From contig NC_083278.1 in assembly GCF_963506605.1 (NCBI RefSeq), positions 4,526,001 through 4,590,000 on the forward strand: DNA of 64,000 nucleotides. The letters are read 5' to 3'. Positions 843-44,099 of this stretch are shown here, in pieces (position 1 is the stretch's first letter; each line of letters opens with the position of its first letter). Source of the DNA: Zootoca vivipara. Its lineage: Eukaryota. The position numbers and the translations under genes are program-made. The notes under the pieces were generated by a model. It had not been told where the DNA came from, did not search any database, and worked only from the letters and a program-made list of their open reading frames with translations.

Positions 843-977
843 AGAATTGTAGTTGGAAGGGACCACAAGGGTCATCTAGTCCAATCCCCTGCAATGCAGG
901 AACATGCAACTGTCCCATACGGGGATCAAACCTGCAATCGTGGCATTATCAGCACCACGCTCTAACCAACTGAGCTA
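843..977 (-). mobile_element. tRNA-derived SINE with CR1-type 3' tail
   Basis: Minus strand reads tagctcagttggttagagcgtggtgctgataa... (A/B-box-like head) and ends ...ggtcccttccaactacaattct; further copies at ~12250, ~16430, ~27130, ~51110. Confidence 0.75.
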
Positions 978-1742
978 AACAACTCCATTATTCTTATGTG
1001 AGTAGTGGAGCCAACCACAAGAAGACGCACACAGCCCAGCAGCTGATGCATTCGCAACAGCTCACTTCTAGGAGCTGGAAACCTACGATACCCCATTCTT
1101 CACCTAACTGAACTATGACCAACAACACCTGGTGCAGAGTGGCCAAGAACAGGTGTCAGACTCAGTCCCAGGGCCCAAGTAAGTAACACAGAGTGGAGGT
1201 AACACAGCAAAGTTTGTAAAAGGAACTTAAGGTGATGCAATTGTAGAACTGTACAGAAGAAGAATAAAGGAGCAGGGAAGGAAATACATGGGCTAAATAT
1301 ATCCAAGGGTAAGTTAACACAAACGGAATAAGGCAACCTCCAATTCTTTCTAGCTAATAGGAGAGATGGCATGCATGACTGCATGAGACTCTCATGTTCA
1401 AACTAATGAAAACTGATGTTTAAGGTTTTTAAAAATTTAAATCTTTTTTTAAAACCCACATAATTTGGGTCTTTAAAAAAGCAAATTATTTGTTAACTCC
1501 GTTTCTTACAGGGGAAAAGACACATGGGATTTCTATAACCAACACATTTAACAGTCCTAATTTTGTTCTTTAAATAGCATGCATGAGAGAGGCAATCACA
1601 GCACTTGGGGAGGGAGCCTTTATCTCTTTTCCCCACACTGTGTGGTCCTGATGGAAACTACCCTCTTTAGCCCCAGGACAGTTTTCTCCACTCATGGCTG
1701 CTGCTTATGGAACAAAATGCAGACATGCTAACCATTACATAC

Positions 1743-2638: not shown

Positions 2639-3800
2639 CTAGGCTTCTTCATAGCTGTAGGTCTTCCTCAAACGTTAGAAAGACATATTGCAAACTGACA
2701 CTGTATTTTGTTTCTTACCCTCACAAAGCAGTTCTCTCTTTCCAGCAGGGCCTGGGTGGAACCAACAACATCCTGTCTTTCATTAACTATAGCCTAATAA
2801 AATACCAGCAAAATCTGTGAAGTAAAACTGCTGAATGAAAAGCAGTAATTAAGAATTAATTCTATGAGCAGGACAGCACTGTAGGATAAGTAGATCCATG
2901 ATTAAAGAAGACACAGGAAATAAAGCTACATAAACATCTTTTAAAAATTAATGGGATTTGGGTGCAACTTTGAGGCTATATTGAATTATAGATAATCTTG
3001 GAGTAGAATAAAAAGTGCAAAGAGAAACAAAAAGTGGTGAAAGAAGTTGCCATTATTACTTCTTGTACAGATCAGAAGGTTAGAAGGAAAGCAGACTTTT
3101 CTGGTTGGAGCTATTAATCCAACATGCTTTAAGATATTTTATATTAATTTAGAATAAGTAGAATACATATTTAGAATATTTAATACTATTAGTATTTACT
3201 TTGAGAATACATCCTAAAATTGTATAATAAACATATAAATAAAACATTCTTATTTTGAGTTTTAGCACAAGTCAAAAAAAATTCCCCAGAGTCTACAATA
3301 GTGTGCTCCACTTCAATCCTATTTTAGAAATGCTGCACCACTGAATCAAAAGGTCAATAATTTGGTGATAAGCATCTATTCTTAAGGAAATTCAGGGGCA
3401 AACTTACAATCTTTCTTTTGCAAAGCAGACCCAAAATAATTCTAGTCATTAAATCGTCCTGTGGGAAGGATCCTGGTGTCTTTTTATTTTTTTTGTTGCT
3501 GTTTTAAATTGTGTTTTAAAGCTTCTTGTAAACCATATTGGAAATATTGCAGAACATAAACAACTGTAATAAATGAATAAATAACTTGCAGTCCTACATA
3601 CATATATTATTTACCCAAATAGATGTCACATTTAAAAAGTTGTTTCATTTTAATTTTAAAAAATAATTAAAATATAACTACAGTATAAAAATCCCCATGC
3701 AGAGCAGACAAGAACTGAGCTTTATCTGAACCCCAAACTATATGGAACTCAAAGTACAGATGACTTTACAACAACAAAGTGGCTGTCAGTCCTTGTGTAC

Positions 3801-3941
3801 CTTGTAGTAATATATTTTGTCAGCCTCATGCTCTACGAAACCTCTTAACAAGAGTATCCACCTTCTCTCCAAAGCTGAGAAAGCTTTATTAGAGTAGTGC
3901 CAGTACTGATTTCTTACTACTGCCGCCAAACTCAGGTGTAC
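3801..3941 (-). CDS. Candidate exon of the novel gene (VHLSLAAVVRNQYWHYSNKAFSALERRWILLLRGFVEHEADKIYYYK)
   Basis: Acceptor ctgaaacatttttccatagcgcAG, 141 nt open phase 0 to phase 0, donor AAG|GTACAC; lies inside ORF 3786..4127. Confidence 0.4.
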
Positions 3942-4172
3942 CTGCGCTATGGAAAAATGTTTCAGCCAGTTTTCAGAATCTTTGGTCCCTCCAGGTTGAA
4001 GACTTCTGCCAGCCTTGCTGGGTGATCTACTCAAGGGTGTAGAGACTGCTGGAAGAGACTTACAAGAAAGCAGGGTGGAGTGAGGAATCACAGTGAATAC
4101 ACCATATTCTATCAACCCAAGATTCAAATTTGCCTACACAAAGTATTATCCTCAGCATTCATCCAAAAGAAA

Positions 4173-4557
4173 ATAAAAAAATTTCTTCAGTAGCACCTTA
4201 AAGACCAACTAAGTTTTTATTTTTTTTATTTTTTTGGTCCCTCCACTACCATGGAGGGACCTGGTTTGAACAGAGATATCGGATTCTTATCTCATTATAC
4301 ATGATAAGCGATCTTCAGCCATCTCAACCCTTGCTTTTTCATGCAAAACCATTTGCAGTCGTTTTCGGTCATCAACAGCTATCGGTCCACCACCCTTCTG
4401 AGTGATCCCCCATCCCCACCCCCTCCCCACCCCTTCTCTACATAAGTGCCTGGGGACTCCTATTTCACTGTATCTGAAGAAGTGTGCATGCACACGAAAG
4501 CTCATACCAAAATAAAAACTTAGTTGGTCTTTAAGGTGCTACTGAAGGAATTTTTTT
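4173..4557 (+). mobile_element. Penelope-like element 3' fragment with inverted terminal segment
   Basis: GIY-YIG C-terminus (MEGPGLNRDIGFLSHYT*); ~4175-4230 is the reverse complement of ~4508-4557; 12-bp direct repeat ATCCAAAAGAAA on both sides (4161-4172, 4558-4569). Confidence 0.8.
4470..4507 (+). ncRNA. Minimal type I hammerhead ribozyme motif (PLE-associated)
   Basis: gtat-CTGAAGA-a-GTGTGCATGCACAC-GAAA-GC-TC-atac: conserved core, palindromic stem II, very short stem III, stem I gtat/atac. Confidence 0.7.
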
Positions 4558-4864
4558 ATCCAAAAGAAAGTTGAGAAGGATGGAACACTACATCCTGAAA
4601 TCTTTTGCTTTCAGTTCAGTGCAGTCAGTACTTAAATGAAATGTAATTCCTTTCCCATGTCTCTAGAAAATGGAGTGCCCCTCTCCAAATGGAAACAGGG
4701 CCACATGTAGGCCACCATAGTCTTCTTGCTCACACCAGAATCTGGCCACCATTTCAGGGCTATAATGGTCTGGCAGCCACATTCTGCAACCACTGACACA
4801 CCTGCACTTAATCAACTGACCTGCTTGATTTTTCTTAAAGAAAAGACTAGCTTAAGACTAGCTT

Positions 4865-5030
4865 TCCCACCCACCCCCACCACCCTCTGTATATATACAT
4901 AAGGGTCTGACTCTTCTGTTTCAAGTGTATCTGACGAAGTGTGCATGCACACAAAAGCTCATACCAAAATAAAAACTTAGTTGGTCTTTAAGGTGCTACT
5001 GAAGGAATTTTTTTATTTTGCTTTAGACTA
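4865..5030 (+). mobile_element. Penelope-like terminal repeat fragment with mutated hammerhead
   Basis: Near-identical to ~4420-4557; core CTGACGA...AAAA (GAAA lost). Confidence 0.75.
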
Positions 5031-5968
5031 CTGTATGACTTACAAAGTAACCACATAAACATTGTGAATAAATAAAATCCTGTGCATTTCTCTGCTACTA
5101 CAAACATTTGGAAACTAAACAGGACTCTTTTTTGACATGATGAGTAATTATATAAATTGCCTTCAATATATAACTGCCTTAGCTTAGCCACCGATGGAGC
5201 TGACAGTCCATTAACAGGAAAAGCATGCAGCTCAATAACAATGCTCAGCATTTGTACAGTACTTTGAGTCTAATTCCTTGCAATCCCTGTCACCCCCCTG
5301 TGTCCGATGGGGGCCTGAGGCTGAGAGAGAAAAGCGTGGCCAAGGCCATGTGATGCAGTCATGGCAGAGGTGACATTCAAAGCCAGGATGCAAATGCTTA
5401 GCTCAGTGCATTATTTTTATTATTTATTTCAAGTATTTATATACCACTTTTCATCTGAAAATTTCCCAAAGGAGTTCAATAGCCATTGTGTTATGCCTGC
5501 TTGTAAATATGAAGATAACCCTTCTGAGCAGGATAAGGAAAATTTCCCCAGATTCTTATTTATATTCCAGCTTTTCTCCAAGGACCTCAAAGTGGTGCAC
5601 ACACTTTCCCCTCCCCTCTCTGTTTTATCCTCACAGTGACCCTGTGAGGTAGGCTAGACTGAGAGACTGTGAGTGCCCCACGGTCATCTTTGGGGAAGAG
5701 TGGGGATTCAAATCCTGGTTCCCCTGGTCCATCACTCTTGCCAGTACACCACCATTGGCTCTTTTGAAATGTAAAGAATCAAGGTCTAGCTAAGGAATTT
5801 GGCTACTTATGTTGAAATCAGTTGACCTCACAATGGGAGTTTTAGATTTATTAATTTTTTAAAGAAACTTAATTAAATCAAAATGAAACGCTGTTTTAAC
5901 TGTTTTGCACAGCACTGCCTATTTTGTGATAGTGGATATGGTCCCACGTTAAGCACCTAGTCACTCAC

Positions 5969-6073
5969 TTGTTTCCGCTCCGCCCTCATCTGCTCCATTT
6001 GGGCCCTTGGACAGCGAAGTCTTATGAGCCACTCCAAGTCTGTACTTTCCTGCCTTGGCACTCCAGGATAGAC
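5969..6073 (-). CDS. Novel gene exon (VYPGVPRQESTDLEWLIRLRCPRAQMEQMRAERKQ)
   Basis: Pyrimidine tract + catcctAG acceptor, 105 nt open phase 0, consensus donor CAA|GTGAGT; paralogous to the exon at 9373-9483. Confidence 0.75.
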
Positions 6074-6695
6074 CTAGGATGAAATGGTTAACTTTGCAAA
6101 AAGGGAAAAAAAAGAGCCCACTAGTCTTAACAAACAAAAATATCCAGAGGCCTTTAAAGAATATACTGGCTCCTCTCAACAGCTCCAGATCACAGCTTGT
6201 CAAGCCAGACGTCAACTTTCTAATAACTCACTCTAAAACTATATGTATCTTGTAGGCTACTGAGTGGAATGGGGAGCCTGCACTTAGTACAACAGAACTT
6301 CTCTACAATAGACAATAAGTGTTCCAAAGTTAGGTCATAGGACTGTGACATCAGTCCTGAATTCCAACTTATTCAATTCTTTGTGATGCTTTTCTTTATT
6401 CCCTAAAAGTTCTTTCTACCTGAAAGAACATGGCATAATAGCAAAGGATATGTAGAAATTAGATAAGGTGACTAAGCAGAATGTATTTGGCATAGTGTTA
6501 TGGAAAGTGCTGTATCTTAGAAGTACAATGCACACATACAGTGCTTCCCAAAATTCTCGTCTTCTGCTATAGTTCTGAGAAACTAAGAAACAGGCCAATT
6601 ACAGCACAAACATGCAATACATCCTTAATGATACATAAGAAACTAGTTTAACAATGTTTCTATGTAGCTATCACACTAAGATTTAAATAGCTGTA

Positions 6696-6926
6696 CAGTA
6701 GTACCTCGGCTTACGAACAGTCCTGCTTACGAACGCTTCGGGTTACAAACTCCACAAACCCGGAAGTAGGTGTCCCAGGTTGCAAACTTTGCCCCAGGAT
6801 AAGAACACAATCTGCTTCCGGGGCCGCAGGAGGCCTATGTAGGGAATGCACACCTCGGATTAAGAATGCTTTGGGTTAAGAATGGACTTCCGGAATGAAT
6901 TAAGTTTGTAACCTGAAGTACCACTG
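6696..6926. mobile_element. TcMar-Tigger-type MITE
   Basis: TA-CAGTAGTACCTC...GTACCACTG-TA termini with TA duplication. Confidence 0.8.
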
Positions 6927-7948
6927 TAAACGACTGCATTACCACATCTCAATTTTTATGCTTTTTTTTTTAAGATGCTCTGGGAGCTACAACCAAAAAA
7001 ATGGCTAATACTGTATATGTTTTAAACATATAAATAAATAGTCCTTAAGGGAGCTGAAAGGGGGTGAAAAGAATTACAGCTTCCCATGTTTAATTTGCCT
7101 CACTTATAACACTTTCAAACAGATGTTCCAAGTTTTGTAATCAACACAAAACCCGTAAAACCTATTTGTTGAGTTGAAAGTTAAATGTATAAACAACCAA
7201 CAAACCATAATTCATTTCCAAATCACCAGCTCTAAAAATACTAGCATCTGTCACCAACCTTAGCCACAACAGGTTTCTGAAAATTAATTTCAGTTTAACT
7301 TGTATCTGTTTCCCTTCACATAACATGTGATAAAGAATATATAACAAATAAGTAAATGATTATTTTTTAACAATATCCAGCTCCTTCTTATCATTTATCT
7401 TTAATTGCCAGTTTAGTTTACTTATAGAATGTGTTGGCTGCTTTTCCATCCAAAGGTGCCCAAAGACAATATTTATTGCTATTTATTGAGCAGATGAAGT
7501 TTTGTGGTACATTCTGTCTCTTTAATGTTATTGTTGCTTACTAAATTTGTATACCACCCTTCTTCCATAGATCTCAGGGCGGTACACAACATAAAACAAG
7601 ATACAGAGGATTGCTTCATGGGATCAGTAGGAAACTAAGTAGCAGTGCTCTCTGAAATCCCCCTCCCAAATCAGACACAGCTTCTCCTAACAAATTTCAG
7701 GAGACAATAAAAGCCATGTATTTAAGAAGGGATAGCATTTTTGAAAATTTTAGAAGCATTGTGGAGACATATATAACACAAATCTTAAATATTGTGAAAG
7801 AAAGGAAAAGCAAACAGAAGAAGGCTCTTATGAACTGATGCACTGTTACCATCATCATATCCATCAAGAATTAAAAATCAGTATGTCTGGAATTCAGAAT
7901 GCATCAGCTTTATTGCATTTATTCAAGAAAACATTTGACCTTCTGTAC

Positions 7949-8032
7949 CTGGTAAGGTGTAATGGGCATCCATTCTGTAAGCGCTATAAAATCCTCTTCT
8001 TTATCCAAATGTGAGAATCCAGTCTTTGTAGG
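7949..8032 (-). CDS. Novel gene exon (PTKTGFSHLDKEEDFIALTEWMPITPYQ)
   Basis: Acceptor atcattacAG, 84 nt open phase 0, donor CAG|GTACAG. Confidence 0.6.
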
Positions 8033-9372
8033 CTGTAATGATATTTGATGGATAAATTTGAAGTAAAAAAAGCATCTAAAGCAATGCTTGCTTGAGAGTA
8101 TGTCTCATTGTCACATCTTTCTGACTTAAGAGTGAGCAGTGACAGGCTGATGTGCTTTAAGTTCCAAGAGATCTCCCAGTTTCCTCAAAACAAGTGTGTT
8201 TCTTTAAAAAGCGTGAGAGCCAATGTAATGCAAGTATCACACAAGGGTTTTTTTTTCTTTCCTCTCCTCCCTCCTGAGTCCTCCCAACCCCCTCAAACAA
8301 GGGGGCTAGATGCAGAAGAGAAACTGAAAATCATGTTGCACAAGCTGATTTCCGTTGAACAAAGGGACATACTGTATATCACCGCATGTTACCCCAAGAG
8401 TATAAACTTAGTTTCTTTCAGTCATTAAAAATATCATTTAATTGGCTTGGGGAAAATGCCAAAAAATTTCACCTTCACAGGACAACCAAGCACTGAGGAA
8501 AATAAAGTCAGTGTTGGAGTAGGAATTTTTAAAAAAATCTGAGTAGAAAAATTGTCTTCTAAATCAGATGCTTTAAAAAATCAGACTATATGCATTTTAA
8601 AAATCATACTATATGGTTGGAGATATTGTGTGTGTGTGTGCATCTGACGTGGCACAGCCCTTACTACTTTATGCTCACAAGGTAAAGGAAGCCCCAGCTG
8701 ACACAGTGTCCAGGCGAATTAAGCAGATGTGCAAGAAGAGGGTAGGTAGAGCCCCTTAGGTTAATTAAGTTTATTAAAATAAACAGTGAGACAGCTCAGA
8801 ATAGTAAGGGCATTATGTGCCAAGACCCAAATCTAGGGGGGAAAAACTTTTAACTCAGGAGCTAAATTCTAAGGGTAGGAAGTCTTGAGAAAAGCTCTCA
8901 GGGGAGGGGAGTTCTCACATGCCCATGTGCTGCTTGCAGGTTTCCCACAGACATGTGACTGGCCAGATCCGGCAGAATCTTATGTTCGTATGACATGGGA
9001 ATTTCATGGTGTCTCCTACATTTTCATGTATCATATTAAATTTATTTTGAAATATTCAGTGTTGTTAAGATGCTATACTTTTGAACTGCATATGCAGTCA
9101 ACTGGATCCAGAAGGAATTTAGAGCAAGAGGAAATGAGTTTATCCCAACTGCATGTTGAGTATATGTGGCACATGAATTTGGCTAATTTTTAAAAGCAAA
9201 ATCTAAATATAGAGGCAGAATTCGATCAATTATGTAGTTCTTTACTAAATCAACCCAATGCCCAATTATCCAGGTTGCACACTGAGAACTGTTGTGTCAC
9301 AAAGGTTCATACACATTGTTGTCCTCTTCTCAAGTCTTAGATACATAAACGTCAGGTTACTAAAATATTGAC

Positions 9373-9483
9373 CTTTTTTGCTTGGGCATATCTACGATAT
9401 CGATGCCGGGCTTTTGGACAGCAAACTTTTATAAGCCAGTCTTCTCCTGAGTTGTCACTATCTAAAGATGTTGCTGAATCAGT
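9373..9483 (-). CDS. Novel gene exon (TDSATSLDSDNSGEDWLIKVCCPKARHRYRRYAQAKK)
   Basis: Strong acceptor tgtttgttgttttttctAG; only the phase-0 frame is open (111 nt); donor AAG|GTCAAT. Confidence 0.75.
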
Positions 9484-9723
9484 CTAGAAAAAACAACAAA
9501 CACATTAAAGTGAATGATAAACAATGGAAACTTTCTGCATAGATGGCTTTCCCCAACCAACTAGAACTGCCATTTGTAGAAATGCCGGTTTGTTTAGAAG
9601 CCTACAAAGAATGTTCTTGATAAAATTCTTCTCAGATGTCAACTGCTAAAAGTAATGGGGAAATCCTCATAACTAAATAATCAGGTGTGATCCCTACCTC
9701 TTGCTGAACTGCCCATTCTAGAA

Positions 9724-9853
9724 CAGGGATGGGGAACTTGAGGCCCTCCAAAGAGTTCCTGGGACTACATGCCTCACCACTGGCCATGCTGATGAGGCCT
9801 GCTGGGAACTGAAGGCCATGGAGATCTGGAGGACCAAAGGTTCCCCATCCATG
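9724..9853. mobile_element. hAT-Charlie-type MITE
   Basis: CAGGGATGGGGAAC...GTTCCCCATCCATG inverted termini with tctaga-like flanks. Confidence 0.6.
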
Positions 9854-10401
9854 TTTAGAACAATATCATTTATAGAGGGAGTTGGGTTGGGAACACGACT
9901 ACCTCAGTGCTTACCGAACATACGTAAGCTGCAGGGATACATACACCACTTTGAGAAAATCTGCTGTCTACTTCATGGGGGTGGGGGAAGAAAAAAACCT
10001 CTTTGCGTATTCATGTTATCACTAGCAGGGTATTTATAACAATGATGATTTTGCAGCTTCTGATGTTTTGTTGTTTATTATTACATTTTTGTGCTTGTAA
10101 TTATGTATTTTTTCACATGGCTTTATCTATTGAAAGGCGGCTAAGGAATAAAACGATGAATGGATGGGTGTAAAATACAGATACTTTAGATTATCTGTGC
10201 AATTATGTGCATGTTTCCTCAGAAGTCAGCCCCACTGTACTCAATAAGATCCCCCCCCCCAGGTTTAAGATTGGAGCTCGTCACCGTTTGCCCTTTGTAG
10301 TTTTAAGCACACATGTAAATATTTTGCCCAAGCTATGTGCTTTTATGGTTCTGAGACTCTTAGCCCCGAGTTTAAACTTTTATGTCAGTGGTTTCCTCAA
10401 C

Positions 10402-10464
10402 CTGCCTTGCCTTGTAGATACAAAGGAAGGTCTTATCCCAAAGATGCTTCGTGTGGTTTAAAAT
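10402..10464 (-). CDS. Novel gene candidate exon 2 (ILNHTKHLWDKTFLCIYKARQ)
   Basis: Acceptor cattctgtcgcttgcAG, 63 nt open phase 0, donor CAG|GTTGAG (or in-frame GC donor AAG|GCAAGG ending at 10411); W..C..KAR echo of the repeat motif. Confidence 0.45.
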
Positions 10465-10968
10465 CTGCAAGCGACAGAATGTGATGCTTGTACCTTTCAT
10501 GAACTTCAGATACTTGCTTAGATATGCTTTTAGTAGCAATGTTTACTCGTTTTTGGAAGCCAGCAAGTTGCCCAGGAAGCCAACTACACAACTTCAGATG
10601 AAATGTGCAATGGGTAGTGCCTAATACCAGTATATCGGCATTTCTTTTAAATCAGGATTGGTTTAAACTTAAATGGGGCTTATGGTAAGTTATCTTGCCA
10701 GTGGTGTTTTAAGTATTACACATGGATTTTATTATAGTTTTTGAGTGGAAGCATAACTGTAATTCTGCTTCCAGCTGGTTATGGATGGGCAATGCTTCAG
10801 CAGTGCTAAAGAGTCCTAGTGCTCAAATGACCGAAATCTACCGGTAGTTTGTGTGTGACAGACAGCAGAGCCAGAGTCTCAGAAATTCCAGCAGAGGGCT
10901 GAAGCCTCTCTCTGATTGGCTACCCAGCCAGCCTGCCAGGTGGAGCCAGCAGAATTGTGGCATGTGGT

Positions 10969-11185
10969 TAGGGTTGCCAGACTTAAGAGAGGACAGGACT
11001 TCTCTGCCTTTAATTGCCCTGCTCTCTTTTGAATCTGGAAACCTTAGAGAAACCAGCAGACCCTTTGTTTGGAAATTAAACAAAGGGTCTGCTGGTTTCT
11101 CTTTAAGGTTTCCAGACTCAAAAGAGAGCAGGGCAATCAATTAAAGGCACAGAAGTGCTGTCCTCTATTGAGTCTGGCAACCCTA
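10969..11185. mobile_element. Foldback hAT MITE
   Basis: TAGGGTTGCCAGACT...AGTCTGGCAACCCTA, near-complete palindrome, perfect 8-bp TSD CATGTGGT (10961-10968 / 11186-11193). Confidence 0.9.
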
Positions 11186-11433
11186 CATGTGGTCTGTATA
11201 TTTTGCATCTCTCAACTATTAAATTCTAGCATTGCTGTTAATTAGTTTATTCCTATCTGCAAAGCAACCTTTTCTGAATATGCACCTTTTCTAGTTAAGA
11301 ACATTGTGTTGCTTTACATGTTACAAAAGTCCTAAAATAAGCTGTTTCCATGTAGCAAACCATACAGAGTAGTAATCTTTGAGGGGTCAGACAGGGTTCA
11401 GGCTGAGAAATAGGGCTTGGTCTGAGATGGGAG

Positions 11434-12149
11434 GGTGAAAGAGGAGAGCGCAAAATATGGTCTGAAGCTCAACATCAAAAAAACCAAGATCATGGCCACT
11501 GGTCCCATCACCTCCTGGCAAATAGAAGGGGAAGAAATAGAGGCAGTGAGAGATTTCACCTTCTTGGGCTCCTTGATCACTGCAGATGGTGACAGCAGTC
11601 ACGAAATTAAATGACGCCTGCTTCTTGGGAGAAAAGCAATGACAAACCTAGACAGCATCTTAAAAAGCAGAGACATCACCTTGCCGACAAAGGTCCGTAT
11701 AGTTAAAGCTATGGTTTTCCCAGTAGTGATGTATGGAAGTGAGAGCTGGACCATAAAGAAGGCTGATCGCTGAAGAATTGATGCTTTTGAATTATGGTAC
11801 TGGAGGAGACTCTTGACTTGAGAGTCCCATGGACTGCAAGAAGATCAAACCTATCCATTCTTATGGAAATCAGCCCTGAGTGCTCACTGGAAGGACAGAT
11901 CCTGAAGCTGAGGCTCCAATACTTTGGCCACCTCATGAGAGGAGAAGACTCCCTGGAAAAGACGTTGATATTGGGAAAGATGGAGGGCACAAGGAGAAGC
12001 GGACAACAGAGGACGAGATGGTTGGACAGTGTTCTCGAAGCTACGAACATGAGTTTGACCAAACTGCGGGAGGCAGTGGAAGACAGGAGTGCTTGGTGTG
12101 CTATGGTCCATGGGGTCACGAAGCGTCGGACACGACTAAACAACAACAA
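11434..12149 (+). mobile_element. BovB/RTE LINE, 5'-truncated
   Basis: RT C-terminal peptides (RVPWTARRSNLSIL...KLRLQYFGHLMR...HGVTK), (CAA)n tail, 12-bp TSD CTGAGATGGGAG (11422-11433 / 12150-12161). Confidence 0.92.
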
Positions 12150-12249
12150 CTGAGATGGGAGAAAGGGATGAGGGGAGTGTCCCAGACGTGGTTGGACTAC
12201 AGCGCCCATCATGCACTGCGGTGGGGGGGAGGTGCAGCCCAAGGGCGGC

Positions 12250-12385
12250 CCAGCTGCTTAGAGCGCAGGTGCTGAACACGCCGAGGATGCAGGTTCGATC
12301 CCCGTGTGGGACAGCTGCTTCTTCCTGCCTTGCAGGGGGTCGGACTAGATGTCCCCCAGGGTCCCTTTCCAACTCCACCGTTCTA
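12250..12385 (+). mobile_element. tRNA-derived SINE (CR1-tail family), CpG-rich copy
   Basis: gcaggttcgatcccc B-box-like motif and ...ggtccctttccaactc tail; similar to 843-977. Confidence 0.6.
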
Positions 12386-13110
12386 AGGTTCTGTGCCCTC
12401 TGAGGAACCGCTTCTCAAGACTGAGAAGGGCCGGTCCGCAGGGGCGGCTGCGGAGATTCGGCGGCCTTAGGAAAGCGAGGCTGAGCCGGTCAGCCCGGCC
12501 CCGGGGGTCCCTCTGGCCGTCGCCACTCACTCGGTCGGGGAGGCCCGGAGGAGGATGGTGCTCTTTGGGCGTGGATGTCATTGGCCCCCGCTTCCCTCCG
12601 GGGCTCTCGCTTCCCTCGGGGGCCTCCATGCCCGCCGGCCCGGCCCGGCCCGGCCTCGCCCAGCACAGCACAGCCCGCCGGGGTTGGACGCCTCTTCGCC
12701 GCGCGCCGAGGAAGGACGCCGCGCGCCGGCCTCGGAGCGTCCCTCCGCCGGGGAAAAAGAGTCCCTCGGGTTCTCCTTCCTGGAACTCCCTACGGAGTTC
12801 CGTGGCCCCCGCGAAAGGCTTCTCCCGGGTAGTGGTTGCCTCTTACCGGGCTGGGAACGGGGCTTCGGTTGGAAACACACGCGAGTCCCACCAGCCCCAA
12901 GAAGAAAACGGCAAGTCGCCTTGCTGTATTCATCCGCGCAAGGCGGCATCGTAGCCATGGCGATTTGGGGCGAGGAAGGAGCTCCAATCAAAAGGGAGCG
13001 CGCTGCCTGAGGAGCCAATCGCTGGCCTCTGCCATTCATCCGCTGAAGAGGCTCGTGGTTGCAGCGATTGGCTTTGGAGAGACGACGGGGCGGGCTGGTC
13101 CTGCAATCCG
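12300..13110. promoter_or_regulatory. CpG island promoter of the novel gene with three CCAAT (NF-Y) boxes
   Basis: High GC/CpG density; CCAAT at 12984 and 13015, ATTGG at 13067; GC-box-like ggggcggg at ~13087. Confidence 0.75.
12847..12933 (-). CDS. Novel gene coding exon 1: signal peptide / signal anchor (MNTARRLAVFFLGLVGLACVSNRSPVPSP)
   Basis: ATG at 12933, basic n-region + 14-residue hydrophobic core, consensus donor CCG|GTAAGA in phase 0 matching all downstream exons. Confidence 0.65.
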
Positions 13111-16100
13111 CTTGCATGTACTTTACTGTAATTATTTATCACTCAGCCGGGGATGGTGCGCCTGAGCATGTGCAGAGAGCCAGCCCCTCCCCAAGTGCCT
13201 CCCTGAAACAGCTGGCAGCAAGGATGTGGGGACTAGCCACTTGATAACTAGTTATAAATTATCTGGAGAAACCAGAGTTTCCATAGCAGTGGAGACGCCC
13301 AGCGGACACATACGGACATTACCCAAACATCATGGATAAACAACAGGAAACATTGATTGATCTGAGGTGACTGTTTAATTTCACAAAGTCACAGTGTTCT
13401 CTTGCAGTGTGTTGGCCGGGTATTGCACAAATAGGTAAGAGTTTGCAGAGAAAGAAGATAGTTGGGTTTTGGATTTGCATCAGCAAAACCCTGACAGAAA
13501 TGAGGTTCTGGCCAATCAACCTTTTGTGGGCTATGCTTTCTCAAGCAAGCAATTAAAAAAAAAACATGTGTTCCAATTATTGCTTCCAAAACTAATGAAG
13601 AACTAGATAAAGAAGTTTCATCTTGGGGAGCTTTGAAGACCTATGCTATACCAGCCCATCCAGTCAACCAGTGTTGTTACCTTGCTGGCCTTGTCGCCTA
13701 ACCTGTGCAACAGCAAGCAGGCCATCCGAATACTGGTGGTGAATTGGTGACCATGAATAAAAACTATCCTTCACAAACTTTTGGCTGCCCCCTCTTTTCC
13801 TCTTGCTCATATCCTTCATTTACGTTGCTGTTTCTCAGGCCTATCTTCCTTTAGAATGACCCTTCCTGAGCTCCCTGCCTATTTGCTTCCTTATCTCACC
13901 CTTCTTCCTTGACTTTCCCGTTCCTGCCCGCAATGCTACTTCTTTCTTTGGGTTTGTTATAAGCAAAGTGGCCTTTCATGGTTCTATCATCAAGAAGCCA
14001 ACTTGCCTATGATGCCTGATTTGATTTACAGTAATTGATTTATTATATTTCTTTGCCGCTTTCCATTCACATGAACCGCAAAGCGGCTTATAAACAAAAA
14101 ATAAAAATAGCAGAATAGAACATAACAAATATAACATAAATCACATAGAATAATTAACAAATCATTAGTATAATGATTACAAATCACCAGTAAACCAAAT
14201 ACAATCTATATAGCACAAAACAAAACAACAACAAAGCTAATCAGCACATTTACAACAAAAGTTATTAAAGCTTTCTGCACCCAGGGATAGAAAGATGCAG
14301 AAAGCTTTAATGGCTTGGAAAAATAGCCAAGGGGACTGGGTTGTCAGCTGAGGAGCCTCTCAGGAAAGAAGAAGGAACACCAGATAGCTATGCTGAACTA
14401 AAGTAAACCCACAGAAAACAAACACTCCCGCAGCCTTGGAATTAGTAAGAAGGGCAGCACTATGAAAAGAAGAAAATGAAAAATATTTTGATAAAATGAA
14501 CGCACAGAATAAAACTCATGTGTTGTAAGAGGAAGGGGTATGTTGCTGTTGACCATGGAGAGGAGTGCTGAAAGAAAGTCAATTTTGTGAATCTGCAGCC
14601 CTTTTCCACCTGCTGCACCCTGGAAAGCTTTCAAAGCCACCTTGAGACAGGAAATGAGTTGCAATCCAGACACTTAATGGCCAATTCTGGATCAAACTTA
14701 AGGCCATGTTCATATGTCAGGTTTTCATGCTGCTTGGTAAATTTGGTGAGGGGTGTTATTTTGGGGGGTGGGACACAGTTGACTGACAGTTCCTTCTCAT
14801 ACTAACATTCCTCCCATTGCTTCAGACTGAATGATTGTGTTTATACAACCAAATACTATTTTTAAAAATGGAGTGTGGCAGACAAGAGAGTTTGTGAAGC
14901 TGCATAGGATATAAACATCTGAATTACAGTAGGATGTGGTAGCAATGCAGTTTTTGTAAAGCAGTGAGATGTTCAACAAGTGTGCAGATTCCAAGGGGGT
15001 GAAAGACCACATAGGAAGGCTCCAACTAGATCAAAACCATGGGCAAAGAGTTGATGTATTGCTGCACTTTGCCATTTGAAACAATAATTCTACCATGGAA
15101 TCTGAACGGTTGACCATTAATAATATCAACCAGGATCCTATTTCTAAGAGCTTCCTGCAAAATCTCATCTTGGGATCTCAATGGGATCACATTATTAAAA
15201 AAAAATGCTTTGAAAGAATTATTGGTATTACTTCATCTCATGAACATTACATGTGTATCAAACAAAATTATTGGGGGGGGGGGGCTTACACGTGAAATGT
15301 GTCTGGAAACATTTACAGTCTTCTTCCATTATTTATACTTTACACCAAACACTTTTCAAGAGCATTTGTTGCACACATTTCATTTTTGGTGGTTTTAGTT
15401 TTGACATATCTCAGTCCTGGGCTGAGCTTTAAAGGTTTTTGCGTAGGCCAAAATTATCTCTCTCTCTCTTTACATTTCATACCCTCATAATGGGATGAGA
15501 TGAAAAATTGAAATTTGGACGGCATGAGGTAACAAAGTTGGATCACTTGATATGGAATGACCCAGATAGCAGAACTTGCAAACATAGATTTGACACAAAG
15601 ATTGCAATGTAGCCACAGGTAGATGAGATGCAGGCTATGATCTGAATTGTGATGATATATGTAGAATGCTGATAAAACAGCAGACTAATTATTCATCTGT
15701 TGAATTTTAAAACTTTTCCCTTTAGCTGAACTCTGGAAAGTGTAGTCTGCTGACACTCTGGAATTGCTTAGTGGAATGCTGATCAAGGGGAAAACCCATT
15801 CCAATGGGCAACAAAACAATGGAGAAAACCACACACATTTTAACCTAGCCAATGTTTTTCTGCTGACATAAACATTGTGGCCAAATTAACCTGTGGAGGA
15901 AGATTTGTAGGGCCACAGATTTACAACTCCTTCATTCCCAGATAGGAAAGTACTTGGACAGGTGATACCTCTCTCCCAATAGCACCTGAGATTCTGGGAA
16001 GGATTCGGCTGAGGGATTCCTGGGGAACAAATGGTGGTGGGCTGGCTCCTAGGATCGAAAAGAGGCAGGTGAAAGATCTAGCACTAGTGTGGGTTGCCAA

Positions 16101-17857: not shown

Positions 17858-18405
17858 GGTGGGAATGGGTGATAGACTGATAGGTGTGGAAATTCGTTGA
17901 TGACTGTTAACGACGGCAATTGGTCCTACAGGAAAAAGCAAGGGGTGAGATGGCTTTATAATGAGATAATAATAACAACAGAATGAGATAATAATAATAA
18001 CAGAAGTTGCTGAACTGCAACTCATTACCAAACTTAAAACCATGGAAAGACCTGGTCTGAATAAAGACATTGGATTCTTATCTCATTATACATGATAAAG
18101 CTTTCTTTAGCCATCTCACCCCTTGATTTTCCCTGTAAGACCAATTGCAGTCATTAACAGTCATCAACGAGTTTCCACACCTATCAGTCTATCACCCATT
18201 CCCACCACCCTTCTGAGTAATACCCCCACACACCCTCTTTATACATAAGGGTCTGGAGACTTCTGTTTCAGTGTATCTGAAGAAGTGTGCATGCACACAA
18301 AAGCTCATACCAATGACAAACTTACTTGGTATCGAAGCTGCTACTGGAAGGATTTTTTTTTTTTTGTTTCAACTACGCCAGACCAACATGGCTGCCTACC
18401 TGTAT
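17858..18405 (+). mobile_element. Penelope-like element 3' end with inverted duplication
   Basis: EVAELQLITKLKTMERPGLNKDIGFLSHYT* (GIY-YIG C-terminus) at ~18003-18095; 17858-17990 is an inverted copy of ~18080-18205; degenerate hammerhead at ~18273-18310. Confidence 0.8.
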
Positions 18406-18891: not shown

Positions 18892-19144
18892 TCATTTCTG
18901 TTTATGCACTTGGATTGGCTGTGTTTGTGATATAGTGGTGCCTTGTTGTGTTTGGCACATACTAATGGAAAAGGTGTCTGGCTGCCTTTTTCTTTCAAAA
19001 CTATAACATTCAATTTTTTCTTCAGCGGAGACGGTCCTAGTGCTTATTAAACGAAATCCTTCTTTGAGTAATAAGTCAACCAGCAGGCCAAGCACATTTG
19101 TTCCATTAATCAATTTCCTCTGATCAGGTTTTATAGAAACATAT
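18892..19144 (-). CDS. KCNRG: Potassium channel regulator, coding exon 2
   Basis: Acceptor ttttttccAG; RYVSIKPDQRKLINGTNVLGLLVDLLLKEGF matches the KCNRG C-terminus; phase 2 matches exon 1. Confidence 0.93.
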
Positions 19145-19485
19145 CTGGAAAAAATCATGAATAAATGTTAGTGCCAACATGTACCCAGATAGTATACACC
19201 TACACTTGGTATTTTGCCTACCAGTGCAATAAAAATGATCAGTAGCAGTCTTGCCTTAGTTATTGCACATGCCTAAATATAAACTAGAAATGGATTAAAG
19301 CAGACAGCTGAGGTGTAAGGTATATAATGAATGTATATAATGAATGTAGTAGAATTAGGAAGAACCTATTTGTATGAAGCAGGGTTTAAAAGAGAAAGTC
19401 TGAAAAAGGTATGAACATTTGTCAGAGTTGCATGAGAGTACATATGCTATTTGTATTGTGTTAGCTTTGGAATCTAGAAAAATAC

Positions 19486-20060
19486 CTTGCTATAAACTGA
19501 TCACTGTAGTCAGTGCCACACTGGAAAATGACATCATGATGGGAAGGCCTCTCCAAAGAAAGGGGAATCAGCGACTTCTGTGAAGGGTCATTATGGCTTT
19601 TCCAAGTTGTTCCAACAAGCTTTTCTGAAAATACAGTGATTCGTCCAGCCAGTTCACCAACAGTGATGCTACAAGAGCCAAACACCCGGAAAAAAGCTTG
19701 ACTTTCTTGGAGCAAGAATCGTATTTCCAAGATCTCTAGCTTTGGTTTCAACAAACTTTCTCGACTCAGAAGGTCAGCCAGAGAGGAAATTTCATAGAAA
19801 TCAGCCTCTCTCTGCAGCCTCTGGTAGTCTGAGAAGTCACTGGGCAGAGAAAGCTGCCGTGTTCTTAAGAAGTCCAGAATATAGCTGAACAGAACTCCAT
19901 CACGGTCTATAAAGAACTGGCCATTCACCAACCTACATTCTAAGTCATTGCCACCCAACATCCTTGCCAATCTAGATTCAGGGAATTGCTGTAGCGTAGA
20001 ACGCCATGTTGTGAATTTCACTCCTCCCACATTCAAAATGCTCACATCTTGATTGTTCAT
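19486..20060 (-). CDS. KCNRG: Potassium channel regulator, coding exon 1 (BTB/T1 domain)
   Basis: MNNQDVSILNVGGVKFTT...FFIDRDGVLFSYILDFLR; donor AG|GTATTT; ~275 aa spliced; adjacent to TRIM13 as in other vertebrates. Confidence 0.95.
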
Positions 20061-22487: not shown

Positions 22488-23714
22488 TTACAAAATTTTG
22501 TATTTGCACATAAATTGGGCAATATTATCCAACATCACAAGGGTGTAATTTACACATGTTTCACTTAGAGTGGCGGCACCATCAGTCATCTTCTCCCAGT
22601 AGATGATAGCATGATCTGCCATCTCTGCTGTGTCTGCCAGATAACTTGTGCCAAATGCAGATATAAGTATTTTCCAGTGCTGGAGAGTGTTAGATAGAAA
22701 GTCCATAAAAGACATCTGTGTGGCAGCAAGTATAAGGAAGGAAAGCAAAACCATCACAATAAACTTATGTAAGGACAATGGAGAAAATGCCCAGTTAAAA
22801 GTACTTTTCTCCTGAGGTAAAGAAAGTTTGTCCACATCTGCAAGCTTAAATTGTTCCCACTGGCTTGTATCAAATCCTTTCATTGTGGAACTGATGTTGA
22901 CAGTAAGACAAGGCAATTTGGTTTCCTTGATCACTTTGATTTTCTCTCGGAATTCTTGCATCTGTTGCAAAAAAACAATGGGTTCAGACACCTCTTTAAA
23001 GGCTTCGGCAATATTAAAAGCGGTTCGTTGTTCTCGTATAATAGTGTTCAGTTTATTAATTTCTGGATCGTATGCCTGCATGACTGCAAGCTTCATTGTC
23101 TCAAAATCTGAAAGTATCTCATTCTTTTTTTGTTCCAATGTATACTGCAATTTCTCAAAAAAATCTTTTACTCTGTCATAGTCCTTTGTCAGCATCTGGA
23201 GGGCTTTGCGCTTGCTGGCTTCCAGGGTGTCTAGCCGAGAAAGTGCATCCCCACAACGCCATGATTCAAAACCCTGGAACAATGTTTCAAAAGCAAGTTT
23301 TTCCTGAAAATAAGCATCTTCAATAGAACAAAACACATGTTTTATATGATCTCCTCGAGTTGCACAGATACCACATATCAACTGTGTGTCTGTTTGGCAG
23401 AAAATGTTGAGAGGCTGACCGCTGTGTACTTTGCACACAGGCATCTTTGAGGTGACCTTAATCTTGTTATATTTCTCTACGATACCTTTGAGGGAATAGT
23501 TGACTTGCAGGCTGTTAACCCCTGTCACAGTGGTTTCCTTCCGACATGTTGGGCATTTGAAGAGAGACTGTCTCCAAATTACAGTCCGAGCATTTCCCTC
23601 CAAAATCCCTTCCAAACATTTCTTACAGAAGTTATGTGAGCAGGGTAGGGCTCGGGGATCCTCAAACAAACTACAACAAATGGGACATGTAAGATCTTCT
23701 TCAAGGAGCTCCAT
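22488..23714 (-). CDS. TRIM13: E3 ubiquitin ligase TRIM13 (RING, B-box, coiled coil, C-terminal TM), single coding exon, 408 aa
   Basis: MELLEEDLTCPICCSLFEDPRALPCSHNFC...; acceptor ttttattacAG just upstream (exon starts 23720). Confidence 0.97.
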   Translation of the reverse strand: MELLEEDLTCPICCSLFEDPRALPCSHNFCKKCLEGILEGNARTVIWRQSLFKCPTCRKETTVTGVNSLQVNYSLKGIVEKYNKIKVTSKMPVCKVHSGQPLNIFCQTDTQLICGICATRGDHIKHVFCSIEDAYFQEKLAFETLFQGFESWRCGDALSRLDTLEASKRKALQMLTKDYDRVKDFFEKLQYTLEQKKNEILSDFETMKLAVMQAYDPEINKLNTIIREQRTAFNIAEAFKEVSEPIVFLQQMQEFREKIKVIKETKLPCLTVNISSTMKGFDTSQWEQFKLADVDKLSLPQEKSTFNWAFSPLSLHKFIVMVLLSFLILAATQMSFMDFLSNTLQHWKILISAFGTSYLADTAEMADHAIIYWEKMTDGAATLSETCVNYTLVMLDNIAQFMCKYKIL

Positions 23715-39300: not shown

Positions 39301-39521
39301 GGATTTCATTTCACATATACTACGACTGAATGCAACCCTCTGCATCTTTTTTTTTTTAAAAAAAAACACCAACCATGCACTTTCTCTCCCCAGTTTAAGT
39401 CCTCGGATATTTGCAGTGCCCAATTCCCCCCCCTTGATTTACAATCCCCTACCTTCCCCTTGCCACGTCCTGGGTTTTTTATGGAACTGAACAACTCGGG
39501 TGCTTCAGAACGCGCCTTCTG

Positions 39522-39795
39522 CCCCACAAACAGTACTTCTGTCTTGTCAGGATTCAACCTCAACCTCAATCTGTTAGCCGCCATCCAGCCTCCAACCGCC
39601 TCCAGACACTCACACAGGACCTTCACCGCCTTCACTGGTTCTGATTTGAAAGAGAGGTAGAGCTGGGTATCATCCGCATACTGATGAACACCCAGCCCAA
39701 ACCCCCTGATGATCTCTCCCAGCAGCCGCATGTAAATGTTGAAAAGCATGGGGGAGAGGACAGAACCCTGAGGCACCCACAAGTGAGAGCCCAGG
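39522..39795 (-). mobile_element. L2-clade LINE RT fragment
   Basis: [16 protein letters not shown]...[10 protein letters not shown]...LNPDKTEVL. Confidence 0.85.
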
Positions 39796-40781: not shown

Positions 40782-43600
40782 TGTCATGTGACAAAGACGC
40801 ATGAGAGCAGGAACAGCAAAGCAGGCTAGAATCCCAACTGTCATAACTAACTGCCTCAACTGTCATTCTAGGCTCAACTGCCAGTTCCAGGCTGTGTGAC
40901 TAAACTGAACAGTCATGTTTATCTTTGTCTCAGAGTATGTGCCAGTATAGAGCTGAGTCTGTGTTCTGTAACTGTTTACTATTTTATGAAGAACTTTATT
41001 TTAAACTTAATAAAGCTTTTATTATTTAAATGAAGTACTCTGCTTAAATAATTCTCGCTGTGCGTCAGGTTATGGGCCCAGAGTTTGTCTTTGTCACATG
41101 GAAAAGCTGGATGAGAAGGCCGACCGGGGGAGTTCCAGTCGCTCTGTCTACCAGAGACCCAGATTCTCAGGAGGAGATGGGACCAAAGTACGCTCCACGG
41201 ATCATGCCATGTTGGCGAATAAATGTTTCCAGTGTAACAAATTTGAACACATGAAGAAAAATTGAAAATCCCAGCAAGAGCGAGTGGTTCATGTGAGACA
41301 GAAAAGTGGACGCATTTCGTCTCAGCCGCTGCAAGAAAAGAAAAGAACTTTTCCCCCAGACAGCTACATTTTGGACTCTGGTTCTTCCAGAATCATAATG
41401 AACAGCCCTGACTGTTTTACCTCAGCAAATTACCAAAAGGCAAGGACAGCATTTGTCTTGCTGATGGAATGCATTGCTCAATTTCAGGTATAGGTACGGT
41501 TTTTCGACCAGGTCTAGATGTAGAATTGAGTGATGTGTTGTTTGCTGAAAAATTAGAATTTTATTTAATGTCCATTTAATGTCTTAGAAAGGTTGGTTTT
41601 GCATTTATTTTTGTGGGTGATTCTTTAACTTTACCTAGTGTTTTATTAAGAAACAGGGAAAGGCGATTACTTCTACAAAAATGGTGGATGGTTTGTACTG
41701 TTTACAGAATTTTTTGTGATGGGGTCACAGAGAGATCTAAAACTGTAAAAAAAAAAGATGTGTTAATAACTGAGCTATGTCAGCAAAACTCTAACTGCCT
41801 ACATAAAAACTGCATTCATGTTCTACACAGAAAAATGGGGCATGCAAGTTTTAAATATATGGTGAACGTGCAAAAAAGGTAAAGGTTTAAAAGTTACCAG
41901 TGCAGCACCTACCTTGATTGTGCTATTTGCAAGCAAGCAAAATCAAAGTTGCAACCAATACCAGGTATAAGTGATAGAATTTCTACACATGTTCTGCAAA
42001 TTGTTCATTCTGATTTAATTGGTCCTTTTCCAGAGAGTGAGGGAGGCTCTAGATTCGGTCTGATTATTGTGGATGATAAAACAAGATATTCATGGCTATA
42101 TTTATTGAGAAACAAATCAGAATGTGCTGATGTTTTTAAGTCCTGGAAGGTATGGGCAGGAAAATGTTTTCAAAGGCCAGACATTCAACTCCAAAGTGAC
42201 CAAGGAGGCGAATATTTAAGTAATCATTTCCAGGCATGGCTTAAAAGCCATGGAATAACACATCACCTCACATGTCTAAATAGTCCTTGGCAAAATGGGC
42301 TTGCAGAAGGACATGGGGGCATTATACAAATCGTAAAGGACAGCTTGCTAACTGATGCTGGATTGCTCTTGGCTGAGTTTGACATCCAACAAATATCAGG
42401 ATAGTTGAAATCCCACATTATTCAGGGGTAAAATATGCAGAGAAGCAGATGGAAGTTTCTTAATATGCCAAGAACAAAAGATTAAAGATTTGCTTGAACA
42501 GCTAGAAATGCAGAATTGTAATGCTGTGCTATGACTGTAGATTTTCAAAAGACTGAAAGTGATGTTTTGTTTGATCAACCAGATTTATATCAATCAGTAA
42601 TAGGATCTCTTTTGTACCTGAGGTCAAGGCCTGATATTTCTTTTCATGTAGGTATTCTAAGTAGAAAAGTGAGTAAGCCTAGTTTAAATGATTGAGCTGC
42701 TGTTAAGCGAACTTTGAGATATTTGAAGGGTACACAGAATAAGTGTATAAAATTATCTGCATCCAATTCAAATGATTTACAGGTGTTTGTGGACAGTGAC
42801 TTCGCAAATTGTCCATCCATGAGAAAATCAACCAGCGGATTAGTGGTCATGTTTAGAAATTCACTAATTGGTTGGAAATCCAAAAAGCAAGGATTTGTTG
42901 CCACATTGACTTGAGAGGCAGAATTTTATGCATTATCTGATGCGTGTAACGAAGTCACATGGTACATCCAGGTATTACATGATTTGGGATATAAAGTACA
43001 GCAGCCTGTGACAATCTATGAGGATATTAAAGCTTGTATTGCAATCGCTAATTCAGGAAACACTTCAACACGTGCAAAACATGTAGCAATTACCGTAAGT
43101 TTTTCAATGTTAAAGATTATATACAACGTAATGTGATTAAAGTTAGTTTATTGTCAATCACATGATAATTGTCTGATTTATTTACAAAAGCGTTTCCTAG
43201 AGTACAACATGGTGATTGGATTGCAAAGCCGACTCTTGTAGACAAAAGTATATACTGTAAATAAGTTAGTTTTCCATGTTTATATTACTGCTCTCCAGGT
43301 CCTTGGGGGAGTGTCGTGACAAAGACGCATGAGAGCAGGAACAGCAAGGCAGGCTAGAAGAATCCCAACAGTCATAACTGTAACTACATCAACTGTCATT
43401 CTAGGCTTAACTGCCAATTCAAGGCTGTGTGACTAAACTGAACAGTCATGTTTATCTTTGTCTCAGAGTGTCTGCCAGTATAGAGCTGAGTCTGTGTTCT
43501 GTAACTGTTTACAATTTTATGAAGAACTTTATTTTAAACTTAATAAAGCTTTCATTATTTAAATGAGGTACTCTGCTTAATTAATTACCGCTGCGTGTAA
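40782..43600 (+). mobile_element. Ty1/Copia LTR retrotransposon, internally deleted and decayed
   Basis: LTRs 40782-41067 and 43312-43600; PBS GGTTATGGGCCCAG; PPT TTGGGGGAG; TSD ggatg/ggata; domain order zinc knuckle, protease (ILDSGSS), integrase (VHSDLIGP..VDD..SDQGGEY..QNGLAE), RT/RNaseH (VDSDFA..RKSTSG..WKSKKQ). Confidence 0.93.
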
Positions 43601-43917: not shown

Positions 43918-44099
43918 GGGGATACTATTTATTAAAACAGCTCGCCTGGCACACACATCTTTTGCGCGAATCTGGCACATAGTAAAACCTTTTATTTCAA
44001 GGTTGTTGGTTTTAAAAGAACATTAAAAAGCATGCATGCCTAGGTCAACAATTCCCTGGGTTCAGATGTCAGGTTTCCGGACCATATTGTGTGCAAGGA

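What the first reader, a model, noticed from the sequence alone, without database searches (positions are those of the whole stretch)
5969..12933. Unrecognised multi-exon gene for a secreted or membrane-anchored protein, in the interval that is non-coding (DLEU2) in human
Seen: a CpG island with CCAAT boxes, then minus-strand exons 12933-12847, (10464-10402), 9483-9373, 8032-7949 and 6073-5969. Each has AG/GT boundaries, is a multiple of 3 and is open in phase 0. Spliced: MNTARRLAVFFLGLVGLACVSNRSPVPSP|ILNHTKHLWDKTFLCIYKARQ|TDSATSLDSDNSGEDWLIKVCCPKARHRYRRYAQAKK|PTKTGFSHLDKEEDFIALTEWMPITPYQ|VYPGVPRQESTDLEWLIRLRCPRAQMEQMRAERKQ... Established: in human the sequence beyond KCNRG is DLEU2/miR-15a/16-1 territory, with no protein-coding gene that I know of. 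Inference: a lineage-specific or mammal-lost gene. I do not recognise the protein family.
Basis: partly seen in the sequence, partly recalled or inferred. Interest (0 to 1): 0.88.

Follow-up and report, generated by a model that had tools for sequence, protein, structure and literature searches.

The report
Lizard FAM228B gene, already annotated
The stretch is the first half of the common lizard's FAM228B-type gene, whose protein family sits in the central apparatus of sperm tails and cilia and is already annotated, so it is a real but ordinary gene and not a new secreted protein.

Summary
The gene is real, but it is already known. They are joined in an RNA contig and in raw RNA reads, and they match an existing database protein residue for residue: Zootoca vivipara 'uncharacterized protein LOC118082609 isoform X3'.

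The real first exon is 12669-12531, with its ATG at 12629. Two further exons follow at 4058-3942 and 2793-2719, and the gene then runs off the window start.

Relatives in squamates, turtles, crocodilians and birds are named FAM228B or FAM228B-like (Pfam PF28229). They match mouse FAM228B in the solved sperm central apparatus (9ijj, E about 1e-47) and, more weakly, Chlamydomonas FAP239. So the protein is intracellular and bound to the axoneme. It is neither secreted nor lost in mammals.

Two points are mildly unusual:
- In squamates the gene lies directly downstream of KCNRG, while in birds the two genes are on different chromosomes.
- Sauropsids carry a disordered N-terminal extension built from a duplicated two-exon unit with a WL[IL]xxxCP motif. 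The scan also noted this repeat as s1-850520, on this same stretch.

Interest is low.

The parts
12400..13100 (.). CpG-island promoter region with CCAAT/ATTGG boxes at 12984, 13015 and 13067
   Evidence: GC 0.62-0.75 and CpG o/e 0.75-0.97. The RNA contig begins at 12669, inside the island.
12531..12669 (-). Exon 1: at least 40 nt of 5'UTR plus CDS 12629-12531 (33 codons, starting MEAPEG...); GT donor at 12530
   Evidence: X1 contig piece 12669-12531 is joined to 9483. 33/33 identical to P0052 and 30/33 to Lacerta agilis P0019.
9373..9483 (-).
   Evidence: Joints 12531>9483 and 9373>8032. 37/37 identical to P0052. phmmer found 7 true homologues.
7949..8032 (-).
   Evidence: Contig piece 8032-7947 and 4 raw reads at joint 9373>8032. 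All 28 residues identical to P0052.
5969..6073 (-).
   Evidence: 35/35 identical to P0052 and P0019. Outside the stretch laid with reads.
3942..4058 (-).
   Evidence: All 39 residues identical to P0052. AG acceptor and GT donor in phase 0. Aligned to 9ijj_q through P0019 residues 158-172.
2719..2793 (-). The rest of the gene lies beyond the window start.
   Evidence: 24/25 identical to P0019. The motif recurs across the family. No later exon was found in 1-2718.

Best explanation
The stretch holds the promoter and first six coding exons of the lizard orthologue of FAM228B. In Zootoca vivipara it is already annotated as LOC118082609, and in related squamates as FAM228B or FAM228B-like. The gene runs on the minus strand from a CpG-island promoter about 6 kb downstream of KCNRG, and its conserved C-terminal FAM228 core lies beyond the window start. 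By homology (inferred, not shown for the lizard), the protein is a cytoplasmic component of the central apparatus of motile cilia and sperm flagella. In mouse sperm, FAM228B binds the C2 microtubule and, with KIF9, CFAP20 and SPAG16, forms the base that carries CFAP65 and the C2a projection. Exons 1 to 5 in the window encode a sauropsid N-terminal extension of about 160 residues. It is predicted to be disordered and was built by tandem duplication of a two-exon unit with a conserved WL[IL]xxxCP motif. Its role is unknown; the likeliest guess is extra contacts with the microtubule or with neighbouring proteins.
For: RNA: contig X1 record 1 joins 12669-12531 | 9483-9373 | 8032-7947 on the minus strand, and raw reads of X22 cross 9373>8032. 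Identity: window exons 1-5 match P0052 [Zootoca vivipara LOC118082609 isoform X3] at every residue (33+37+28+35+39 = 172 residues), and exon 6 is 24/25 identical to Lacerta agilis P0019. Family: 155 homologues, named FAM228B or FAM228B-like and carrying PF28229 (named 'FAM228'), occur in squamates, turtles, crocodilians and birds. PDB 9ijj_q, mouse 'Protein FAM228B', scores E 1.3e-46 and 1.1e-47, and Chlamydomonas FAP239 scores E 2e-5. Function of the family: PMC12297659. N-terminal extension: pLDDT is below 50 over residues 1-165, followed by a long helix at 166-262. The two units align over about 60 residues in a turtle (score 90 against a null of 26.5 +/- 5). The repeats are conserved in squamates, turtles and birds.
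Against: The conserved FAM228 core is outside the window, so family membership of this copy rests on exon 5 tail, exon 6, and on identity to database proteins that continue into the core. The local Pfam copy lacks PF28229 and gave no hit. Read depth on the exons is very low (0.4-2x), so minor isoforms or an upstream untranslated exon cannot be excluded. Orthology versus an old paralogue was not tested with a rooted tree. Central-apparatus localisation is known only for mouse and Chlamydomonas.
Confidence: 0.93

Rival explanations
1. One reading: a novel gene for a secreted or membrane-anchored protein that starts with a signal-peptide exon at 12933-12847, with an optional exon at 10464-10402.
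For: The 29-codon ORF has a hydrophobic core and a GT donor in phase 0, and it lies in the CpG island.
Against: Depth over 12700-13299 and 10300-10499 is zero in three RNA runs and the contig set. The transcript contig starts at 12669 and uses the donor at 12531. Every homologue starts with an ME(A/V)-type polar exon and none carries these peptides. Open AG..GT phase-0 segments are abundant by chance (1044).
Confidence: 0.02
2. The gene is not the orthologue of amniote FAM228B but an old paralogue kept only in squamates next to KCNRG, the copy at the ancestral position having been lost. That would be a truly 'mammal-lost' gene of a known family.
For: Its position differs from that of bird FAM228B: eight of eight birds have the two genes on contigs of different size. 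NCBI names many squamate copies 'FAM228B-like'.
Against: Only one FAM228 gene per squamate species appears among the hits; differently named entries of one species share the same N-terminus. The squamate proteins share the two-repeat N-terminal extension with turtle FAM228B, and repeat 2 with bird FAM228B. That is the pattern expected of orthologues. Reciprocal loss is the less parsimonious account.
Confidence: 0.05

Closest known systems
Zootoca vivipara LOC118082609 (isoform X3, P0052) and Lacerta agilis 'FAM228B-like' (P0019)
   Same: Exons 1-5 of the window are identical to P0052 at all 172 residues, and exon 6 is 24/25 identical to P0019. It is the same gene or its direct orthologue, already in public annotation.
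   Different: Nothing substantive. Isoform X3 skips exon 6 and the following core exons.
Mouse FAM228B (PDB 9ijj chain q, sperm central apparatus)
   Same: The core aligns at E about 1e-47, from the ENWL/KEWL motif in window exon 5 through the LLERENCFVR helix and onward. The protein binds the C2 microtubule under the C2a projection.
   Different: The mouse chain has only 19 residues before the aligned core. The lizard protein has about 157, with two WL[IL]xxxCP repeats. From my own knowledge and not tested here, the human genes FAM228A and FAM228B lie at 2p23.3, not beside KCNRG at 13q14.
Chlamydomonas FAP239 (PDB 7n61, 7som; central apparatus)
   Same: Weak but specific match over the helical core (E 2e-5; query 189-305). 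The paper treats it as the algal counterpart class.
   Different: It is much longer (528 aa), identity is low, and it has no N-terminal repeat module.
Turtle and bird FAM228B (for example P0042, P0061)
   Same: Same core. Turtles have both repeats and birds have repeat 2.
   Different: In eight of eight birds the gene is on a contig of different size from KCNRG, whereas in 13 of 14 squamates the two are on the same contig.

Membership tests
FAM228 (Pfam PF28229; FAM228A/B) | Sequence match to the FAM228 domain model | tested here: met
   P0052, identical to window exons 1-5, and all close homologues carry the precomputed PF28229 hit; its name is given. The local Pfam copy lacks the model and returned nothing. 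Only the start of the domain (exon 5 tail and exon 6) lies inside the window.
FAM228 (Pfam PF28229; FAM228A/B) | Significant similarity to an experimentally identified FAM228B | tested here: met
   Against 9ijj_q (mouse FAM228B), gecko P0006 scores E 1.3e-46 and Lacerta P0019 scores E 1.1e-47. The aligned part starts in residues encoded by window exons 5 and 6.
FAM228 (Pfam PF28229; FAM228A/B) | Conserved core motifs (DWLTQK-type motif, LxRENxFVR, EVDxYL...) | tested here: met
   ENWLKHF in exon 5 and LLERENCFVR in exon 6. The regex found the second motif in about two thirds of the family proteins, and it sits in a conserved alignment block. The EVDRYL exon lies outside the window.
FAM228 (Pfam PF28229; FAM228A/B) | Location on the C2 microtubule of the ciliary or flagellar central apparatus | not testable with these tools
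   Known for mouse sperm (PMC12297659). Inferred here by homology only.
   The hydrophobic ORF at 12933-12847 has zero read depth. The mRNA contig starts at 12669 and its ATG at 12629 opens a polar, proline-rich N-terminus.
Orthologue of amniote FAM228B (as against a paralogue) | Single copy per genome, with shared derived features and a tree congruent with the species tree | tested here: inconclusive
   One gene per squamate species among the hits, and an N-terminal module shared with turtles and birds.

The most novel reading that the evidence does not exclude
In the squamate stem lineage FAM228B moved from its ancestral amniote position to directly downstream of KCNRG, the place that in mammals holds DLEU2 and miR-15a/16-1. 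No miR-15/16 is present anywhere in this 64-kb window. In addition, the sauropsid-specific disordered N-terminal extension, made by tandem duplication of a two-exon unit with an invariant WL[IL]xxxCP motif, is a functional extra anchoring element in the central apparatus.
Probability: 0.3. Interest if true: 0.3.

Novelty: already known. Interest (0 to 1): 0.1.

Why it matters
This result mainly closes the finding. The candidate with first-stage interest 0.88 is an annotated member of a described family, and its 'signal peptide' is a chance ORF in a GC-rich promoter. Two general cautions follow:
- AG/GT-bounded phase-0 open segments are far too common to define exons (1044 in 13 kb).
- Absence of a coding gene at the syntenic place in human does not mean that mammals lost the gene.

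Two small points are left. The squamate-specific position next to KCNRG may mark an evolutionary breakpoint at the DLEU2/miR-15a/16-1 locus. The conserved WL[IL]xxxCP repeat module has no known function and is absent from the mouse protein whose structure was solved.

Tried and rejected
- **Pfam on the five exon peptides:** nothing, apart from one sub-threshold chance hit (OSTMP1, E 0.026) on the spurious exon 2.
- **Local Pfam on full-length homologues:** no family, because PF28229 is newer than the local copy.
- **Spurious phmmer hits:** P0004 (many PKD and bacterial Ig-like domains) and P0007 (1276 aa, no Pfam family) matched exon 2 in six short stretches each, unlike the lizard homologues. 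I dismissed them as spurious.
- **Rfam and a miR-15/16 seed pattern:** no microRNA in the window.
- **The look-up of encoding contigs:** I used contig lengths from two protein searches as a chromosome-level proxy instead.
- **Protein atlas on the N-terminal 157 residues:** scores of 0.75-0.77, below any useful level, though it gave the name of PF28229.
- **AlphaFold2 with 27 sequences:** mean pLDDT 48.9. This is too low for a fold search, so none was run.
- **Papers naming both FAM228B and KCNRG:** none.
- **Words search of the scan's notes:** nothing.
- **Importin check:** exon 1 of the importin gene at 44733-44816 gave only a weak PDB hit (E 0.13).
- **Joined model not submitted:** Window exons were searched one by one by reference, and the database proteins P0052 and P0019 served as full-length stand-ins.
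- **Not used:** Complex prediction and the third homologous-protein search.
Full report
**Observation**

They have AG/GT borders, lengths that are multiples of three, and open phase-0 frames. That criterion carries little weight on its own. The same strand of the first 13.4 kb holds 1044 AG..GT-bounded open phase-0 segments of 60-300 nt.

Two features go beyond chance:
- A CpG island at about 12400-13000 (GC 0.62-0.75, CpG o/e 0.75-0.97), with CCAAT/ATTGG boxes at 12984, 13015 and 13067.
Its local score is 45, with p about 1e-4 against both random ORF segments of the window and shuffles. The scan had also noted this repeat on the same stretch (s1-850520).

**Context**

The window carries TRIM13 as a single ORF at 22488-23714 (minus strand; RING and B-box domains). 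KCNRG coding exons lie at about 20060-19476 and 19149-19054 (minus strand; BTB_2 domain).

On the other side of TRIM13, a CpG island at 44-45.4 kb holds a plus-strand first exon (44733-44816). Its only PDB match is an importin alpha subunit, and the match is weak (E 0.13). From my own knowledge this fits the human order KPNA3 - (SPRYD7) - TRIM13 - KCNRG. The candidate gene follows KCNRG on the same strand.

No miR-15/16 is present anywhere in the window (Rfam at gathering scores; seed pattern).

**What the exons belong to**

Each was used by reference. A phmmer search with the 37-residue exon 9483-9373 against 1.84 billion representatives gave nine hits. Seven are lizard, gecko or snake proteins, five of which (296-422 aa) carry both repeats. 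The other two are spurious.

Searching with the gecko protein P0006 gave 155 homologues across squamates, turtles, crocodilians and birds. Nearly all are named 'protein FAM228B' or 'FAM228B-like' and carry Pfam PF28229. The atlas names that family 'FAM228'. The local Pfam copy predates the model, which explains the empty scans.

One hit, P0052, is 'uncharacterized protein LOC118082609 isoform X3 [Zootoca vivipara]'.

**Gene model**

Aligning the homologues back to the window gives this minus-strand model:

| Exon | Coordinates | Codons | Note |
|---|---|---|---|
| 1 (CDS) | 12629-12531 | 33 | starts MEAPEG |

All exons are in phase 0 with canonical splice sites. Exons 1-5 are identical to P0052 at all 172 residues. 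Exon 6 is 24/25 identical to Lacerta agilis P0019.

So the window comes from Zootoca vivipara or something indistinguishable from it, and the gene is already in public annotation. No later exon is found in 1-2718. The conserved core, starting EVDRYLKH, therefore lies beyond the window start.

**RNA evidence**

I laid three raw RNA-seq runs of the same species and one contig set on 7300-13299.
- Contig X1 record 1 (716 nt, minus strand) covers 12669-12531, then 9483-9373, then 8032-7947, and continues off the stretch. Both joints have GT..AG ends.
- Four raw reads of X22 cross 9373>8032. Their first mate is on the plus strand, as expected for a minus-strand RNA in a stranded library.
- Overall depth on the true exons is low (0.4-2x). 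The zero depth alone is therefore weak evidence, but the explicit 12531>9483 joint, the contig start at 12669 and the homologues all agree.

The 'signal peptide' is a chance hydrophobic ORF in the GC-rich promoter. The heavy read pile-up at 10900-12300 comes from an interspersed repeat in intron 1 with copies elsewhere in the window.

**What the protein does (inferred by homology)**

Gecko P0006 and Lacerta P0019 match PDB 9ijj chain q, 'Protein FAM228B' of mouse, at E 1.3e-46 and 1.1e-47. They also match Chlamydomonas FAP239 (7n61, 7som) at E 0.004 and 2e-5.

The aligned part of P0019 begins at residue 158. This is inside the peptide encoded by window exon 5 (ENWLKHF, against mouse KEWL), and it runs through exon 6 (LLERENCFVR) into the core.

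The paper behind 9ijj (PMC12297659) places FAM228B on the C2 microtubule of the sperm central apparatus. It is part of the base, with KIF9, CFAP20 and SPAG16, on which CFAP65 and the C2a projection sit.

The lizard protein is therefore most likely an intracellular axonemal protein of motile cilia and sperm flagella. It is not a secreted protein. This step is inference; nothing here shows localisation in a lizard.

Exons 1-5 encode about 157 residues that precede the region aligned with mouse FAM228B, whose solved chain has only 19 residues there.

In a 27-sequence alignment:
- Repeat 1 (DWLI.V.CPGA) is present in squamates and turtles.
- Repeat 2 (WL[IL]RL.CPR) is present in squamates, turtles and birds.
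- Repeat 2 is degenerate in crocodilians.

In a turtle protein the two units align over about 60 residues (score 90 against a null of 26.5 +/- 5). The alignment covers both the WL..CP motif and a downstream K..DWL.Q motif. The extension therefore arose by tandem duplication of a two-exon unit before sauropsids diverged. In the lizard only the first motif is still recognisable between the units.

AlphaFold2 predicts residues 1-165 as disordered (pLDDT 33-47), followed by a long helix at 166-262. The model was too poor for a fold search (mean pLDDT 48.9). I read the module as a disordered arm with two short conserved linear motifs. Its partner is unknown.

**Synteny**

As a proxy I compared, species by species, the length of the contig carrying FAM228B with the length of the one carrying KCNRG.

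- **Squamates:** in 13 of 14 species the two lengths are identical, including a 1.49-Mb Varanus scaffold and a 10.6-Mb Lerista scaffold. The exception is a fragmented assembly. One rattlesnake model (P0039) even fuses KCNRG and FAM228B into one protein. In this window they are about 6 kb apart.
- **Birds:** in eight of eight species the lengths differ. KCNRG typically sits on a contig of about 216-225 Mb and FAM228B on one of about 122-148 Mb.
- **Alligator:** both are on the same 486-Mb chromosome, at unknown distance.
- **Human (my own knowledge, not tested):** FAM228A and FAM228B lie at 2p23.3.

The adjacency is therefore a squamate arrangement, possibly one of all lepidosaurs. It is not a gene that mammals lost from 13q14. 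Unequal lengths could also reflect different assemblies of one species, so the bird result is a proxy and not proof.

**Verdict**

Novelty: already known. Interest: low.

Open points:
- The squamate-specific position next to KCNRG, and where miR-15a/16-1 went.
- The function of the duplicated WL[IL]xxxCP module.
- Formal orthology, which needs a rooted tree with mammalian, amphibian and fish sequences.

Noticed in passing
window 1-64000: No miR-15/miR-16 hairpin anywhere in the window, although TRIM13 and KCNRG are present. In mammals the cluster lies shortly after KCNRG (my own knowledge). Its location in this lizard is unknown.
   Followed up: partly
window 19054-20060 (KCNRG) with 2719-12669 (FAM228B); KCNRG and FAM228B share a contig in 13 of 14 squamates and are fused in one rattlesnake gene model (P0039). 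In 8 of 8 birds they sit on contigs of different size. This suggests a squamate-lineage rearrangement with a breakpoint just after KCNRG.
   Followed up: partly
window 44733-44816 (+), CpG island 44000-45400: First coding exon of an importin-alpha gene, probably KPNA3 by position. Its only PDB match is importin subunit alpha-3 residues 6-23, at E 0.13. No Pfam hit.
   Followed up: partly
window 11431-12149; copies at 55213-55926 and 48133-48647: Interspersed repeat (LINE-like 3' fragment, 94% identical copies) in intron 1 of the gene. It attracts hundreds of RNA reads from many loci, with many variant letters.
   Followed up: partly
window 10969-11185, and 126-325 vs 11186-11379: A 217-bp near-perfect palindrome (88%) sits directly beside a 200-bp segment that recurs inverted (95%) about 11 kb away, in the intron after exon 6. 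In one RNA run, reads change strand at 11069/11163. It is probably a foldback or MITE-like element.
   Followed up: no
window 918-978 (-): tRNA-like match (Rfam tRNA, 32.9 bits, model positions 7-64). It looks like the head of a tRNA-derived SINE and not a tRNA gene.
   Followed up: no
window 4415-4559, 4870-5016, 18039-18376: Three copies (75-86% identical) of another short interspersed repeat: two in the intron between exons 4 and 5, and one downstream of the KCNRG coding exons.
   Followed up: no
window 39306-39782 (-), 41949-42404 (+), 56163-56699 (+): ORFs that look like reverse transcriptase and integrase fragments, judged by eye from their translations. These are transposon remains between TRIM13 and the importin gene and inside the latter.
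   Followed up: no
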